Assembly: GCA_977016875.1 (NCBI GenBank)
Contig: CDRNST010000084.1
Coordinates: 1,674,001 to 1,738,000 of the forward strand
Reading direction: 5' to 3'
From: Pavona decussata
Taxonomy: Eukaryota
Length of the DNA stretch: 64,000 nucleotides
Position numbers and translations under genes: made by a program. Positions 2,223-62,631 of the stretch are shown here, piece by piece. The notes beneath the pieces were generated by a model, which made no database searches, was not told where the DNA came from, and worked only from the letters and a program-made list of their open reading frames with translations. The stretch's first letter is position 1; each line of letters opens with the position of its first letter.

Positions 2223-2631
2223 CTTGGTAGCAATTGTCCGTTAATTTTTCGTTCGTGACGCTGATGTCGCTTAAGACGTGCTCTGGTTCCTTCTCTCTCT
2301 GATTCAGGGGCTCCGGTGGTGGTAAGACCGGCTGCGGAGTGAGGGAAGGAGGTGTGTAGTAATGACAGTGAGTTTCGTAGCTTTGCCTTGGTGCTGCTAG
2401 GTCTGCTAGACGTGATTCACTTGGGTAGTGGATCGCCGATGGTGCTGACGGTGGGATGTGGTTGAACGGAGGCGGGTTAGCGCGCGTGAACGCATTGAAA
2501 CCGTAACGCGGCGCGTTATAAATGTATGGCTGGTAAGACGGATGATGAGGAGAGTTTTGCTGGGGAATATGGTACTGTGGATTGTAATGTCCATAGCCCT
2601 GGCCGCCATAACTGAAGCCTCTAGCGTACAT
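2223..2631 (-). CDS. Mox: Exon 1 of Mox-like paralog 1 (Pro/Tyr/His-rich N-terminus); homeobox exon not in window
   Basis: ATG at 2631 (MYARGFSY...) runs 136 codons + 1 nt to donor CAA G|GTACGT. It shares the phase-1 donor and N-terminal motifs (MYxRG, PY(I/V)Y..RY, HIPP, CxQ|G) of the + strand Mox gene. No homeobox is visible in 1-2222, so the family call is inferred. Confidence 0.75.
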
Positions 2632-4586
2632 GTTTCCCGAGTCGAGACACAGCATCACCAGCACCTTCTGCTGATTAAAAACTTGATTTCCTCCACGGTT
2701 ACATGTGGTTTTAGATCAAACTGCGACTGTTTATGTCGTGCCCCGCTCGCGTAATTGATATACCATACATTCAAGCATGTGCGCTTTTAAAGCCGCATAA
2801 GGTCCTTGTGTCAGTTGATACAAGTGGTCGATTTCAGAGACCTGTGCCAGTGCCCCTGTCAGTGAAATAAGTACATTTCCAAACCTTACTCGATCACCCC
2901 GTTGCGTTTTTAATCTCGTTGGAAAACCATTAGCTGTTAATCGATGACTTGGGTCGCAACTCAGGAAATTTCCCGGTGGACGAAAGCTTCCAAAAAGGAT
3001 CTGCATTTGTCGGCAATGCCGACCACACGAAAAACAAATAACCCATGCGATCCGCAGAGTCCTGATAAACGTTTTCTTTGAATTTGCCGACCTTTATCAG
3101 ATGCTAAACGAATTAGGGCTTACCCCAAGAAAATATTGCCTCATCAGATTTAGATTTTTCGACTAAAACAATATCCATCGGCCAGTATCTAGTTTTCTAG
3201 CTAATTAACATAAAAATTGGGCCTGTAAGCTTTTCAAGTGTTGGTGCCCTTATTGTGCTTTGTTTAAGTGGGTTCAATCATGTGCAACCTTTTTAGTTTA
3301 TTTTTTGTGTTGTCATAGTAAACACAAGAAAGCAATTTATTTAATCTCGTTATAGGAGTCTAAAAGTTTTCAAAGGCGTTCCAAACTTGGCCGCCAGATT
3401 TTAATTTATGCTAGAACAAAAGAATCAACGGACGAGAATATTCATGATTAGCAAACTGGAGGCAAAACCTGGAACTAGCACTAATGTTTAAATTGTCGAT
3501 TAATCTGTCAAGATCGGTATACAAGCTACCTAATTGGCAAGTAATAATTTCCTCGAATTTAAATAGACTTTCTTCATCTTTTATTTCCGCCCATGCTTCC
3601 GATGCCTTCTCGTTTGTTTGCATGAATCTTCAGGTTGAGTATATGTACAGCTCTTGGTAAAACTTTACCTGAGTCAGTGAAGACTATTTAACAGTTCAAT
3701 TCAGAAATTTCCCGTTATTTGCTTGAAATTAAAAACCCTCTTATCAGAGGACTTGATTTATACGCGCCGTTGTGGGAGTCAATTGATGTCCTTGTTGACC
3801 TGGGCTTGAAATTCCACGAGTTCGATGTCATTTGTTTTTCTGAACTTCTGTATTAAGTGATAAAACTTGATTACTGTAAGTGATGTCTTTACTTTCGCAT
3901 ATTTATTAGAAGAGGATATCCCCTGCGATCCTCGACCTAGTCTTGCAACGTTATTCTATGCAAGTCCTTGACGCCAAATGGCATTCATACCAAATAGCAT
4001 AAGGTGCAAATTCCGTTATAACAGACATCTGCAAAGGACATTACCGTACTTTATTGTTCTCTCACTTTTTAACAAGCCGTCATCTTAAGGCTTATCACAA
4101 CGTTTTATACTGTGTACAGAAATTAAATTATCATTATTTTCTTCTTATACTCCCAGTACATCAGTGGGAGTCTCGAAAAATTGGCACAAAGTTTGTAACA
4201 GCAGTGAATAATAATATAGTAAAAAAAAAACAACAACAAAACAACAACAACGAGAAATGCAAAAAAAAAAAAAAGAGCCCTACGCATTGGGCGGACCAAG
4301 TTTATTTTCCCAACCAAACCTGACGAACAAATTTCAAATATTTGTCGTTCACCAGGAAACAGGACGACGGCGCGTTTGAAGTTTGGGAAGGCTTGCTAAA
4401 ATTTGCTTGGAATTAAAAAACGACGTCTGCAGCTGTACAACGAGGAAAATGCAATTGATGAGAGGTGATTTTACGAAGTAAATAGCAATTTGACTAGTGC
4501 CAATGGATGCGGAGTGAAGGAATAAACATACAGATAGCAAGTAAAACAAAACAAAACAACAACAACAACAAAAAAGAAGAGATTTA

Positions 4587-4808
4587 GGTTGCGTTTGATT
4601 GACCGTATTCCGGAATAAGAATAAACGGAATAGGAATTAGATTTCTCTTTTTAGGTGAATTTGGGAAGACATTTGTGCAAACTTTCGCTGATTCACGATA
4701 ATTTAAGAACCATTTTGTACTCCTGTAACTCAAAACACCTATAATGAGGGATTTATTGTCATTATTGCGGGTATTTCTATTCCGGAATAGGATCAATCGA
4801 ACCCACCC
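4587..4808. mobile_element. PIF/Harbinger (Tourist-like) MITE
   Basis: ~31-bp TIRs GGTTGCGTTTGATTGACCGTATTCCGGAATA / TATTCCGGAATAGGATCAATCGAACCCACCC with TTA TSD on both sides. Confidence 0.8.
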
Positions 4809-59290: not shown

Positions 59291-62200
59291 TACTTAATAA
59301 AACGTCGAATGATATCTTTAATACTCGGTTCTCCTTGGTCGCGTACCTCTTTTTTTTTTCCAGTCGCACACATATTCGGCAAGGAAGCTCGCCATGTAGC
59401 GTTCAATATGCTTATAGCTCTTTGTTCCGTGGATTCATTTGGCTGCTAAAATGTGACCATGCAATGCAAGTAAGAGCTCAATGTCGAGCACCGCTTCCTA
59501 GTGGAACTGTTTATTTTACTGTACAAGGCGTTGAATCATCTTTTGACTCCACAGGAAATGAACCCTAAATCATGATCATTCAAACAAAAGCTTATTGAAC
59601 AGTTCAACCTAGTTCGTACTTACAAATTTGGAACTGCAAATTAATCATAAAGTTAACCTAAAATGTAGTCTGGTTTTTTTCCAATGTTTCAGTTGCAAGG
59701 ATTTTTAATATTGAACCAGGGTGCCACATTTATATTGGAAATGAAAAACTGGGGTACAAGACATGGCGGACCGTGATATTCAAGGGATATTACTACATAG
59801 CCCTCGGTTCTTGCACTGAAGCCCGAACACATTTATATCAACCACCTTTACAGCAAAAAGATAAAAGTCTGACAAAATTTGTTAGCCTTTACTGATCCCG
59901 TGGCAAGGAATCGTATATATTTAAAAACTTCAAAAAATTACGTGCATGGCAAAGACTCGAGCAAACTTAGACAAACTAAAGCCTTTAATTGAAGTCTTCC
60001 CTTTTAACGATTTCTGGCTTTAAAGGCTCTTGAGAAACTGACGAGCCCTTAGAATTGTTACGGGAAAATTATCGAAAATACATCGCGCTACTTTCTGTAA
60101 GCCATAATTATTAGTCGTGCAGGGTAAATGAAAGTTATCTCGATTTATGAACACAGACATTTTATTCATTGCACCATCGCACTCTCACAGGTAAGCTAAA
60201 TTTGAATTCTTCTGTATTCGATGGCAGTTCTAATATATATATTTTTTCAAACACGTTATTGCAACCGAAACTTGAAAGAACTGAAATAACCTCTTGGAAA
60301 GTCGAAGCGAGCCAAAAACTCAGCGTAGGGAACCGAGTCTACACCCACAAAAAAGTACTGTCCTAAACAAGCTGCAAGCAAAAAGTCTGAAAGTGTCAGC
60401 TAAATTAAGCTTATAATAACAGCGAAGCCTATATGACGAAGATTTGCAAAAATCATGCCTTGTTCATTTTTATCAGAAGGTTTCTTCGAAACCAACGCAT
60501 TAAAGTAATATCCTTGTATCTCTTGCCGAAAAGGGAGTGTTCTGCAATCATTGCCATCATAGGTCAACATACAACAAAATAGTCCTCATGTATTGAAAAT
60601 GTAACTGTAAAGCAACAATACTGTATTTTGTTAATTCAAGTTTTTCGTGAAATTTCTAAAAACGAAGAGAACTCAAATGTTCAACAGCTTTAATGTAAAT
60701 AGTGACATCTGGGTTTTTAACAGACTCAAAATCAGAGCCGCATAGCTCTATTGTAGGTTTCAGTTTTGGACTGGAATGTTTAGATGAAACTTTAGAGGTT
60801 TCTTCTGCAGCCAAAAACGCTTCATTAATCGTGTGAAAATTTAAACGTAGGAGGTCTTTACTGAACATATTGCAGTCGCAATTTCAACGCAAACCCGCGG
60901 TAAACCAAGGAATTCACTTAGTATTAATCTCTGTTTCGGCTTTCTTTGCGGATTTCCTATCAGTAATATTGTGTTAACAGGATTAAAAATGTTTCTAAGT
61001 AATAGCTTTTTCAGTACTTTAAGGATAAAGTAGAGTCTTAGCCGAAACATCAGACAAAAGATACGAAGAAAACATAAACAACTTGCTGGTCAGCTTTTGG
61101 CTCACATCCGAGGAACAAGTGGCTAATTATAAGAGCTTCCTTTTTCACACTGGAGTTGTTTTTGTTGAAGAATAATCGAAAGCTGAGCTGCAAGCTGCTT
61201 TTTTTAGCTTTCAGTTCCATAGCGAACCGATTTTAAGTAAAACAGTGGATAGGAAAACGAAATTTCTGCAAAGATTTGGCTTAATAGCGCACATAGCACC
61301 AACGACATTCTATCCTTCAGTACGGAGAATGCAGAAAATTTGAGGACAAGTTATAATCTAAGGACTGTCTAAAGTTTTGTTTGCAGGCCGGTTCTAAGGG
61401 CTACAAGTTGTCTTGAAGTTTCATAGTTCTCCTTTATGATAATGTCAGTATTAAAAAGCCGTGCAGTTTAGTGCGAATCAGTGTTTTGTCACAAGCTGAA
61501 AAGTCAACATTTCTTCCCCCCGCCATATTGAGAATTTGGTCTGTCTATGTTTCTAGGTTTTTGTCAGTATATTTTTCCAACCCTCTGCATTTGGCCCGCT
61601 AGGCTTCATTTGTGCGCTTAGGTTTAATTAAACGTCTTCATAAACTTAACATTTCTTATTATAATAATTCCAATTAATATAAGGCAAACTGCCCATTCGG
61701 TTAGCTTCCCGTTTCTAATATTTAAGGTTATATTGTAGTGGTAATGTTTCAAAATTCTCAGTTAGGTTTTGTAACAAGTTCATATTTAAGAGAATTGCTT
61801 TACAAGATGAGAAAGATTAAATCATGCCTAGCAAAAAAAGTAAGAGAGTATTTTTTTGGAGTTAATTCGCGCAAGGTAGGTAATGCGAGAATGATTTATG
61901 TGTGGCAATTGTAATATACACCTAACCAGATGAGGAGGAGTTGAAGGAGATCGAAGAAGCGCCGAGCTGAAGGCTGCGCACCTAACTTGAACTGGAAAAC
62001 ATCCCCATTTCGACGTTGACAAAAAGTTTACATTTGAACGCAAAAGTTTCGATTATTGTCATTAATGTCGAAACAAACTGACCATATTTTTTTAATATGA
62101 AATTTTGGTAAAAGAATTCTTCCGTTAAATTTCCAACTATTGAAAAATGTTTTTCAAAAGGAACTGCAGTATGTTTCCAGGTCTACCGTTAGTTCTTCAG

Positions 62201-62335
62201 CATTGAACAGAGATTAATAATGGCACTGTTTTCCGCATATTGGGTATAGAATTGGTCTAACTTTAGATTCTGGAAATGAAACTCTAAAGTTCGACGATAA
62301 CAATGAACTGTGTTTTTATTCTGTTGCTTTTGCAG

Positions 62336-62631
62336 CTGCGAAAACCGGAAAATCTACCGGAAAGAAAAGGAAGGAAAGAACAGCTTTCACCAAACATCAA
62401 ATTCAAGAACTGGAAAACGAATTTCAGAGAAATAATTACTTAACCAGGCTCAGGAGATACGAGATCGCAGTAAGCTTGGACTTAACGGAAAGGCAGGTCA
62501 AAGTTTGGTTCCAAAACCGTCGGATGAAATGGAAGCGCGTCAAGGGAAAAAGATTGGAAAAGAAAGCTCCAGTGGCCAAAAACCTAAGCAACAACTCAGA
62601 TGAGGAAAGAGCCCAGGAAATTCATATGTAA
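62336..62631 (+). CDS. Mox: Exon 2 (homeobox 62365-62544) of Mox paralog 4; spliced protein 217 aa
   Basis: Acceptor TTGCTTTTGCAG|CT. Manual translation: [97 protein letters not shown]. Absent from the ORF track. Confidence 0.96.

What the first reader, a model, noticed from the sequence alone, without database searches (positions are those of the whole stretch)
2223..62631. Four-gene Mox/Meox homeobox cluster (three tandem, one inverted) with no intervening genes
Seen: three Mox homeoboxes and four similar first exons over at least 60 kb, oriented <- <- <- ->, with no other convincing CDS between them. Known: most bilaterian invertebrates have a single Mox and mammals have two, whereas Nematostella has four clustered paralogs (MoxA-D). 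Inference: this is an old anthozoan Mox cluster. Heavy synonymous divergence between the homeoboxes argues against recent duplication or gene conversion. A retained cluster free of other genes may be co-regulated, with a Hox-like 'Mox code' in the endomesoderm.
Basis: partly seen in the sequence, partly recalled or inferred. Interest (0 to 1): 0.78.

Follow-up and report, generated by a model that had tools for sequence, protein, structure and literature searches.

The report
Conserved coral Mox homeobox gene cluster
This stretch of a stony-coral-like genome holds the coral counterpart of the four-gene Mox developmental-regulator cluster already known from the sea anemone Nematostella; gene order is the same as in other corals and anemones, but one gene is flipped here.

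Summary
The window carries three intact Mox-type homeoboxes and four Mox first exons. The fourth homeobox, for the leftmost gene, lies 3.2 kb beyond the left edge of the window. That gives four complete two-exon genes (244, 209, 209 and 217 aa) across 66.1 kb, all with a phase-1 intron at the same position. These are the only Mox-type homeoboxes in the 602-Mb genome.

No open frame of 80 aa or more between the genes has any Pfam domain, and no Rfam family or tRNA was found there. The spacers hold interspersed repeats.

Each paralog pairs with an ortholog in other stony corals and in sea anemones. A species-specific clade is rejected (AU p = 1.4e-7). Synonymous sites between the homeoboxes are saturated.

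Gene order D-C-B-A, next to a WD40 gene, matches all comparison species. In those, every adjacent gene pair I could see lies on one strand. Here gene D, with at least 1.8 kb of conserved upstream DNA, is inverted.

This is the Nematostella MoxA-D cluster (Ryan et al. 2007) in another hexacoral: a new member of a known kind. The four Nematostella genes were reported to be expressed indistinguishably.

RNA reads could not be obtained. Spliced Pocillopora transcripts support the C and D models.

The parts
2223..2631 (-). Mox gene A, exon 1: 136 codons plus 1 nt, ATG at 2631, donor CAAG|gtacgt after 2223. Exon 2 with the homeobox lies outside the window at L001:6532-6854(-) = C84:1670532-1670854, with a TAG stop. 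The protein is 244 aa.
   Evidence: Exon 1 aligns from end to end with A-type P0121 (76% identity) and with Actinia tenebrosa MOX-1-like P0122 (40%).
10371..10660 (-). Mox gene B, exon 2: homeobox with HD codon 1 at 10616, phase-1 acceptor ttccag|AT at 10660, stop TAG at 10371-10373.
15780..16119 (-). Mox gene B, exon 1: 113 codons plus 1 nt, donor GAAG|gtaata. The protein is 209 aa and the intron 5119 nt.
   Evidence: In the 209-aa B-type protein P0031, exon 1 covers residues 1-113 and exon 2 covers 115-209, leaving exactly one residue for the split codon.
30621..30889 (-). Mox gene C, exon 2: homeobox with HD codon 1 at 30860, phase-1 acceptor ttctag|AC at 30889, stop TGA at 30621-30623.
33748..34108 (-). 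Mox gene C, exon 1: 120 codons plus 1 nt, donor GAAG|gtaaaa. The protein is 209 aa and the intron 2858 nt.
   Evidence: The junction agrees with Orbicella P0131 and Acropora muricata P0130 (209 aa). Pocillopora C transcripts L012 and L013 are spliced at the orthologous site.
56926..57283 (+). Mox gene D, exon 1: 119 codons plus 1 nt, donor CAAG|gtaata. The protein is 217 aa and the intron 5052 nt.
   Evidence: The alignment of the Pocillopora spliced D transcript L009 to the window ends exactly at 57283.
62336..62631 (+). Mox gene D, exon 2: homeobox with HD codon 1 at 62365, phase-1 acceptor ttgcag|CT at 62336, stop TAA at 62629-62631.
   Evidence: The homeodomain is 60/60 identical to the D orthologs of Pocillopora, Porites, Actinostola and Nematostella.
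55139..62645 (+). Smallest segment that is inverted relative to Pocillopora, Porites and Actinostola: gene D plus its conserved upstream DNA. The left breakpoint lies somewhere in 35577-55138. The right breakpoint lies between 62646 and about 87700, beyond the window and before the WD40 gene.
   Evidence: Collinearity maps from blastn and tblastn.
55139..55819 (.). Conserved non-coding block 1.1-1.8 kb upstream of the D start codon.
   Evidence: 72% identity over 683 bp with Porites L015 and 73% over 463 bp with Pocillopora L007. Matches occur in several frames and on both strands, so it is not coding.
56233..56925 (+). Conserved proximal upstream region and 5' UTR of D.
   Evidence: The L009 transcript starts 339 nt upstream of the ATG.
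34109..35576 (-). Conserved upstream region of C.
   Evidence: 68-69% identity over about 1.4 kb with Pocillopora L007 and L011 and with Porites L015.
16120..16904 (-). Conserved upstream region of B. A further block lies at 19452-19711.
   Evidence: Pocillopora L011 and Orbicella L028.
11915..12263 (-). Two conserved blocks in the B intron: 11915-12013 and 12175-12263.
   Evidence: Orbicella L028 at 76-79% identity; Pocillopora L011 at 77%.
8383..8570 (-). Conserved block in the B-A spacer.
   Evidence: 78% identity over 192 bp with Orbicella L028.
2632..4136 (-). Conserved upstream region of A: continuous to 3197, then blocks at 3782-3875 and 4026-4136. The stretch 3024-3116 also matches Nematostella.
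   Evidence: Orbicella L028 at 75% over 1244 bp. Nematostella L014:4864-4956 at 72% over 93 bp, E = 6e-7.
45865..46268 (.). High-copy interspersed repeat of about 400 bp in the C-D spacer. A second family of about 480 bp lies at 49301-49783.
   Evidence: Dozens of copies at 93-97% identity (89-95% for the second family) on other contigs; 21,053 first-look candidates.

Best explanation
This is the orthologue, in a stony-coral-like hexacoral, of the four-gene Mox (Meox) homeobox cluster first described in Nematostella as MoxA-D. It comprises four separate two-exon genes, which I label A, B, C and D from left to right. Each encodes a Mox-class homeodomain transcription factor. Each has its own start, a phase-1 intron at the same position, and its own conserved upstream DNA.

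The four copies arose by tandem duplication before stony corals and sea anemones diverged. They have stayed in the order D-C-B-A next to a WD40-repeat gene. In this genome the spacers have grown through repeat insertions: the cluster spans 66 kb against 23 kb in Nematostella. Gene D together with its upstream region has been turned around, so C and D now face away from each other across 22.8 kb.

Inferred, not shown: the recognition helix is nearly identical in all four, so they probably bind the same TAAT-type sites. By analogy with Nematostella they probably act in endomesoderm. The paralogs differ mainly in the N-terminal exon and in their flanking regulatory DNA.
For: Family:
- Pfam Homeodomain in all four.
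- The best named hits outside Cnidaria are all MOX/MEOX.
- The four group with bilaterian Mox and apart from 12 other ANTP homeodomains of the same genome, with support 97/93*.
- There are only four such homeoboxes in the genome. The score drops from 122 bits or more to 81 bits for the next best.

Gene models:
- Donor and acceptor phases are consistent.
- The exons align from end to end with full-length proteins of relatives, leaving exactly one residue for the split codon.
- Spliced Pocillopora transcripts of D and C use the same junctions.

Age and orthology:
- The D homeodomain is 60/60 identical in the window, Pocillopora, Porites, Actinostola and Nematostella. A differs from Nematostella A by one residue.
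- The C clade holds corals and anemones at 98/95*.
- Exon 1 of A groups with the Actinia A type at 92/86.
- The four window genes as one clade is rejected, with a log-likelihood difference of 177 and p-AU 1.4e-7.
- Ortholog clades for A, D and B are not rejected: p = 0.59, 0.42 and 0.235.
- The homeoboxes are 72-77% identical at nucleotide level and synonymous sites are saturated.

Synteny:
- Pocillopora verrucosa has D> C> B>.
- Porites has WD40< D> followed by the C upstream region.
- Actinostola has WD40< D> C>.
- Orbicella has B> A>.
- Actinia and Nematostella have B> A>.
- Ryan et al. 2007 (PMC1779807) report four Nematostella Mox genes in 23.2 kb, all on one strand, with a PF20-like (WD-repeat) gene 9 kb upstream and no BLASTX hits between them.
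- In this genome the WD40 gene lies to the right of D at L006:3722-5051(+).
Against: - No RNA evidence from this species.
- The B orthology is weak. In the exon-2 tree the stony-coral B genes sit next to stony-coral D (87/100), while the anemone B-like genes sit apart. Only exon 1 (85/85), the homeodomain signature and position in the cluster link them.
- The ortholog groups were named after the sequences had been seen, so the AU tests are permissive rather than confirmatory.
- The inversion of D rests on a single assembly.
- The duplications could not be dated beyond Scleractinia plus Actiniaria, because no identified octocoral or ceriantharian sequences were available.
Confidence: 0.85

Rival explanations
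1. The odd orientation of D is an assembly artefact, such as a mis-oriented segment or a collapsed haplotype. The true locus would be four genes on one strand, as in other hexacorals.
For: All comparison species that show the D-C junction have D and C on one strand. Both sides of D are repeat-rich, which is where assemblers make errors. No independent data for this genome were available.
Against: The region has no N runs and lies in a 3.69-Mb contig. I take the long contig to mean a long-read assembly; that is my guess, not a recorded fact. No long, near-identical inverted repeats flank D that would confuse an assembler. The only such pair is 74-82% identical over 100-170 bp.
Confidence: 0.15
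2. One reading: the cluster stays free of other genes because the four Mox genes share regulation, and they give a colinear or nested 'Mox code' in the endomesoderm.
For: Order and adjacency have been kept across Actiniaria and Scleractinia with no genes in between. Conserved non-coding blocks lie in the spacers and introns. Mox genes are endomesoderm- or mesoderm-associated in Nematostella.
Against: Ryan et al. [quoted passage not shown] The conserved blocks found are mostly within 2-3 kb of individual genes, which fits gene-by-gene control. D has been inverted here without visible damage to any gene. Anthozoan genomes keep local gene order in general, so retention alone is weak evidence.
Confidence: 0.1
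3. The four copies are recent, lineage-specific duplicates, or have been homogenised by gene conversion, and only resemble the Nematostella cluster by convergence.
For: The homeodomains are 83-93% identical in protein. The exon-2 tree places stony-coral B next to D.
Against: The species-specific clade is rejected at p = 1.4e-7. Synonymous sites between paralogs are saturated, and 27-33 of the codons for identical residues differ. Each copy has collinear orthologs with conserved flanking DNA in other corals.
Confidence: 0.01

Closest known systems
Nematostella vectensis MoxA-D cluster (Ryan et al. 2007, PLoS One 2:e153, PMC1779807; also Chourrout et al. 2006, from memory)
   Same: Both have four Mox paralogs, two exons each, adjacent, with no other gene detected between them, and a WD-repeat (PF20-like) gene on the D side. 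The last two genes are B-type then A-type in both. The homeodomain of type D is identical, and that of type A nearly so.
   Different: This cluster spans 66.1 kb against 23.2 kb, with the spacers swollen by interspersed repeats. D is on the opposite strand here, whereas all four Nematostella genes share one orientation.
Mox clusters of annotated stony corals (Pocillopora verrucosa, P. damicornis and assembly GCA_942486045.1, Porites evermanni, Orbicella faveolata)
   Same: The paralog set, gene order, exon structure and upstream conserved blocks are all the same.
   Different: In those genomes D, C and B (and, where seen, B and A) lie on one strand with spacers of 6-8 kb. Here D is inverted and the spacers are 7.7, 14.5 and 22.8 kb. 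Automated names in those records are inconsistent: MOX-1, MOX-2-like, Hox-D9a-like, 'motor neuron and pancreas homeobox 1-like'.
Bilaterian Mox/Meox (one gene in most invertebrates; MEOX1 and MEOX2 in vertebrates)
   Same: They share the homeodomain family. Bilaterian MOX/MEOX proteins are 63-89% identical to these exons over the aligned part, and they form a joint clade against other ANTP homeodomains.
   Different: Bilaterians have a single copy or copies produced by whole-genome duplication, not a tandem four-gene array. No N-terminal similarity to the bilaterian proteins was detected. The vertebrate homeobox is split by an intron (from memory), whereas here it is uninterrupted.

Membership tests
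Mox/Meox homeobox family (ANTP class, Hox-linked) | Contains a 60-residue homeodomain | tested here: met
   PF00046 at E = 6e-25 to 7e-24 for all four, matching the full profile length 1-57.
Mox/Meox homeobox family (ANTP class, Hox-linked) | Closest named relatives are Mox/Meox rather than Hox, Evx, Gsx or others | tested here: met
   All named non-cnidarian hits in the top 120 of both searches that carry a family name are MOX-1, MOX-2 or MEOX. The next best homeoboxes in the same genome are only 51-65% identical.
Mox/Meox homeobox family (ANTP class, Hox-linked) | Forms a clade with bilaterian Mox, apart from other ANTP homeodomains | tested here: met
   A 44-row Mox clade against 12 other ANTP homeodomains of this genome, support 97/93*. 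The outgroup branches are long, so relationships inside the clade are unreliable.
Mox/Meox homeobox family (ANTP class, Hox-linked) | Chromosomal linkage to Hox and Evx ('SuperHox') | not testable with these tools
   The Mox cluster is on contig C84. The Hox-like homeoboxes are on C180 and other contigs. No chromosome-level information is available.
Hexacorallian four-gene Mox cluster (Nematostella MoxA-D type) | Four tandemly linked Mox paralogs with no intervening gene | tested here: met
   Four genes in 66.1 kb. Nothing else was found by ORF and Pfam, Rfam, tRNA or relic searches. Short-exon or unknown non-coding genes cannot be excluded without RNA data.
Hexacorallian four-gene Mox cluster (Nematostella MoxA-D type) | All genes in the same transcriptional orientation | tested here: not met
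   A, B and C are on the minus strand and D on the plus strand. D is inverted relative to Pocillopora, Porites and Actinostola.
Hexacorallian four-gene Mox cluster (Nematostella MoxA-D type) | One-to-one orthology of each paralog between coral and anemone | tested here: inconclusive
   C is clear (98/95*) and A has moderate exon-1 support (92/86). D rests on an identical homeodomain, exon-1 similarity (76-92 bits) and position; no tree resolves it as a clade. B is supported only by position, homeodomain signature and a weak exon-1 grouping (85/85). AU tests do not reject any of the four groups.
Hexacorallian four-gene Mox cluster (Nematostella MoxA-D type) | Conserved gene order and flanking WD40 (PF20-like) gene | tested here: met
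   The order D-C-B-A is pieced together from Pocillopora, Porites, Orbicella, Actinostola, Actinia and Nematostella. Orthologous WD40 exons lie at L006:3722-5051 (PMC1779807).
Hexacorallian four-gene Mox cluster (Nematostella MoxA-D type) | Expression in pharyngeal endoderm or endomesoderm | not testable with these tools

The most novel reading that the evidence does not exclude
The cluster is held together by shared long-range regulation. In corals, unlike what was reported for Nematostella, the four paralogs would then have distinct or nested endomesodermal domains. The natural inversion of D, which puts the C and D promoters head to head across a 22.8-kb repeat-filled spacer, would be a ready-made test of whether orientation matters for that regulation.
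Probability: 0.1. Interest if true: 0.55.

Novelty: new member of a known kind. Interest (0 to 1): 0.3.

Why it matters
The result shows that the four-gene Mox array is not peculiar to Nematostella. It is a stable hexacoral feature, with the same order, intron position, neighbouring WD40 gene and near-invariant homeodomains in both stony corals and sea anemones. That gives a clean set of orthology labels for genes that automated annotation currently names inconsistently (Hox-A4, Hox-D8-like, Hox-D9a-like, Mnx1-like). It also supplies a short list of conserved non-coding blocks to test as enhancers. The single-gene inversion shows that a common orientation is not strictly required for keeping the genes intact. 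None of this changes current understanding of Mox or Hox-linked gene evolution.

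Tried and rejected
After that I ran the large protein searches with genes D and A rather than B. The Pfam sweep of open frames did include frames from that stretch.

Spliced models. 

Look-ups that found nothing. The look-up of encoding contigs had no record for Nematostella P0051 and P0024 (these are isoform X2 products) or for Montipora P0015.

Mechanism of the inversion. A search for inverted repeats flanking D found only weak copies of a 106-bp satellite family, 74-82% identical, at 37.4 kb and 81.6 kb. 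This is not convincing as the cause.

A possible intervening gene. The TrAA12 Pfam hit is a GN-repeat low-complexity frame that scores below the curated cut-off.

Not used. The big representative-protein search, structure prediction and the third homolog search were not needed.

Limits. I could not name the species. Its affinity is with stony corals: 53-79% identity in exon 1, against 40-55% with anemones. I could not map my labels onto Ryan's MoxB, MoxC and MoxD. Only A = MoxA (last gene) and D = the first gene next to the PF20-like gene can be inferred.

Full report
**What is in the sequence**

A six-frame scan finds three uninterrupted homeoboxes in the window: two on the minus strand near 10.5 kb and 30.7 kb, and one on the plus strand near 62.5 kb. 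Each lies in an open frame with a good polypyrimidine/AG acceptor in phase 1, at 10660, 30889 and 62336, and each runs to a stop codon.

Four open frames start with MY and end in a phase-1 AAG|gta donor: 2631..2223(-), 16119..15780(-), 34108..33748(-) and 56926..57283(+).

The window is G000:C84:1674001-1738000. A search of the whole 602-Mb genome with one homeobox exon gives four strong matches, all on this contig, scoring 122-196 bits. The fifth-best scores 81 bits. The fourth strong match lies 3.2 kb to the left of the window, at L001:6532-6854(-). It also has a phase-1 acceptor and completes gene A.

The locus is therefore four complete two-exon genes, which I label from left to right:

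| Gene | Strand | Protein (aa) | Intron (kb) |
|---|---|---|---|
| A | - | 244 | 5.4 |
| B | - | 209 | 5.1 |
| C | - | 209 | 2.9 |
| D | + | 217 | 5.1 |

The whole cluster spans 66.1 kb. A tblastn of all eight exon peptides against 124 kb around the locus finds no further relics.

**Are the gene models real?**

I could not obtain RNA reads. 

Indirect support is good. For all four genes the two exon translations align from end to end with full-length proteins from relatives. They leave exactly the one residue expected for the split codon. Examples are B against the 209-aa P0031, C against the 209-aa Acropora muricata P0130, and D against the 216-aa P0013.

Transcript contigs from Pocillopora for D (L009) and C (L012, L013) skip the intron of the genomic loci. 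The alignment of L009 to the window stops exactly at the predicted donor, 57283.

**What family is this?**

Pfam finds only a homeodomain, in every second exon, and nothing in the first exons. Word-index protein searches used the D and A homeobox frames. The top hits are coral and anemone proteins, followed by bilaterian proteins named MOX-1, MOX-2 or MEOX.

In a tree of the homeodomain plus flanks, the four genes group with cnidarian and bilaterian Mox. They separate from 12 other ANTP homeodomains of the same genome with support 97/93*. These are Mox genes.

**How old are the copies?**

The homeoboxes are 72-77% identical in nucleotides and 83-93% in protein. Of the codons that encode the same residue, 27-33 differ in each pair, and Nei-Gojobori dS is saturated.

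Each copy carries a distinctive signature in helix 1 and in the basic tail after the homeodomain. The same signature recurs in other species:

- **D type.** The homeodomain is identical at 60 of 60 residues in the window, Pocillopora, Porites, Actinostola and Nematostella P0024.
- **A type.** It differs by one residue from the Nematostella copy (L014, P0127) and matches Actinia tenebrosa MOX-1-like P0122.
- **C type.** Stony corals and the anemones Actinostola and Actinia form a clade at 98/95*.
- **B type.** This is less clear. The exon-2 tree puts stony-coral B beside stony-coral D (87/100) and the anemone B-like genes elsewhere. The exon-1 tree puts coral B with anemone B-like at 85/85.

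AU tests gave the following results:

| Constraint | Result |
|---|---|
| Four window genes as one clade | Rejected: log-likelihood difference 177, p = 1.4e-7 |
| A clade (coral + anemone) | Not rejected, p = 0.59 |
| D clade (coral + anemone) | Not rejected, p = 0.42 |
| B clade (coral + anemone) | Not rejected, p = 0.235 |

I named these groups after seeing the sequences, so the non-rejections are permissive only.

The first exons of the four paralogs are only weakly alike: z = 4.8 for A-D but 0.9 for B-C against shuffles. The description 'four similar first exons' is therefore true of layout and composition more than of sequence.

**Synteny**

Loci fetched around orthologs give the following arrangements. 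In all of these species the adjacent Mox gene pairs that I could see lie on one strand.

| Species | Arrangement |
|---|---|
| Pocillopora verrucosa | D> C> B> |
| Pocillopora (two assemblies) | D> C> |
| Porites evermanni | WD40< D>, then the C upstream region |
| Actinostola | WD40< D> C> |
| Orbicella faveolata | B> A> |
| Actinia tenebrosa | B-like> A> |
| Nematostella | B-like> A> |

Ryan et al. 2007 (PMC1779807) reported four Nematostella Mox genes in 23.2 kb, all in one orientation. They found a PF20-like (WD-repeat) gene 9 kb upstream and no BLASTX hits in the spacers.

The ancestral layout is therefore WD40< D> C> B> A>. In this genome the layout, read left to right, is A< B< C< D> followed by WD40> at L006:3722-5051. 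Order is conserved, but D is inverted in place.

D has carried its conserved upstream DNA with it (window 55139-55819 and 56233-56925). C and D now diverge from each other across 22.8 kb.

The breakpoints can only be bracketed, to 35.6-55.1 kb on the left and to 62.6 kb through about 87.7 kb on the right. No long inverted repeats flank the segment.

The inversion rests on this one assembly. The region has no gaps and lies in a 3.7-Mb contig. I rate it about 0.8 likely to be real.

**What lies between the genes?**

- None of the 105 open frames of 80 aa or more has a Pfam domain other than the three homeodomains. The one other hit at E below 0.001 (two more at E about 0.009 were not followed up) is a GN-repeat frame below the cut-off.
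- There are no Rfam families and no tRNAs.
- The C-D spacer holds young, high-copy interspersed repeats.
- Annotated relatives also show no genes between their Mox genes.
- Between D and the WD40 gene, outside the window, there are reverse-transcriptase fragments and a broken TauD-like frame.
- Conserved non-coding blocks lie mostly within 1-3 kb upstream of each gene, with a few in introns and spacers. One 93-bp block upstream of A is even shared with Nematostella.

**Function**

Shown: four intact Mox homeodomain genes whose homeodomains are almost unchanged between orders, which points to strong purifying selection.

Inferred: the recognition helix is nearly the same in all four, so they probably bind the same sites. 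They probably differ through their N-terminal exons and their own regulatory DNA.

In Nematostella, Mox genes are expressed in pharyngeal endoderm and endomesoderm, and moxC behaves as a mesoderm-associated factor.

Ryan et al. state that the four patterns are indistinguishable. The inversion of D shows that a common orientation is dispensable for keeping the genes intact.

**Verdict**

However, this is the known hexacoral Mox cluster in one more genome.

The modest additions are:

- The explicit D-C-B-A orthology and order across stony corals and anemones.
- The conserved WD40 neighbour.
- The set of conserved non-coding blocks.
- A lineage-specific inversion of D.

Earlier notes of this scan call the genome a stony coral and describe another conserved tandem homeobox array in it (s1-480615). 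My sequence affinities agree with the stony-coral reading. This Mox locus itself had not been noted before.

Noticed in passing
L001:7126-7926 (intron of gene A, left of the window); also L002, L003, L005 and window 37465-37576: A 106-bp tandem satellite, 7.6 copies at 85% match. Its family also occurs inside the intron of the Porites evermanni D gene (L015:14036-14256, 77-82% identity), so the repeat family is shared between distant corals.
   Followed up: partly
window 45865-46268 and 49301-49783: Two short interspersed repeat families with many copies across the genome: about 400 bp at 93-97% identity and about 480 bp at 89-95%. The search gave 21,053 first-look candidates. The end of the second family recurs in inverted form at 43828-43935.
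   Followed up: partly
L005:1437-3412 (about 75.4-77.4 kb in window coordinates, right of the window): Three consecutive plus-strand open frames of 307, 136 and 134 aa. The last has a TauD/TfdA dioxygenase domain (E = 8e-15). This looks like a broken or multi-exon TauD-like gene between Mox D and the WD40 gene.
   Followed up: no
L004:7099-8861 and L006:2105-2806: Reverse-transcriptase (RVT_1) fragments of retrotransposons in the stretch between Mox D and the WD40 gene. Ryan et al. also noted a retrotransposon beside the Nematostella cluster.
   Followed up: no
L028 (Orbicella faveolata MZGG01001796.1): The B upstream region with exon 1, the B intron blocks and B exon 2 each occur two or three times in the same order within 25 kb. 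An annotated 231-aa gene joins exon 1 of A to a second copy of B exon 2. This is most likely a duplication artefact in that draft assembly that produced a chimeric gene model.
   Followed up: partly
P0024, P0015, P0131, P0137 (public records): Automated names of clear Mox orthologs are misleading: 'Hox-A4 isoform X2' (Nematostella D type), 'motor neuron and pancreas homeobox protein 1-like' (Montipora D type), 'Hox-D9a-like' (Orbicella C type) and 'Hox-D8-like' (Actinia C type).
   Followed up: yes
window 10371-10660 compared with 62336-62631, and their orthologs: The two exons of stony-coral B give different trees. The homeobox exon and its basic tail (KGKPLQKK) resemble D (KGKRLEKK), whereas exon 1 groups with anemone B-like genes, whose tail resembles A instead. 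This might reflect an ancient conversion of one exon, or just too few informative columns. The AU test cannot decide (p = 0.235).
   Followed up: partly
window 13081-13532: A 225-bp unit repeated twice (92% match) inside the intron of gene B.
   Followed up: no
window 43670-44041 and 49286-49552: Long ATT/ATA-type microsatellite runs that read as poly-isoleucine open frames. They are not genes.
   Followed up: no
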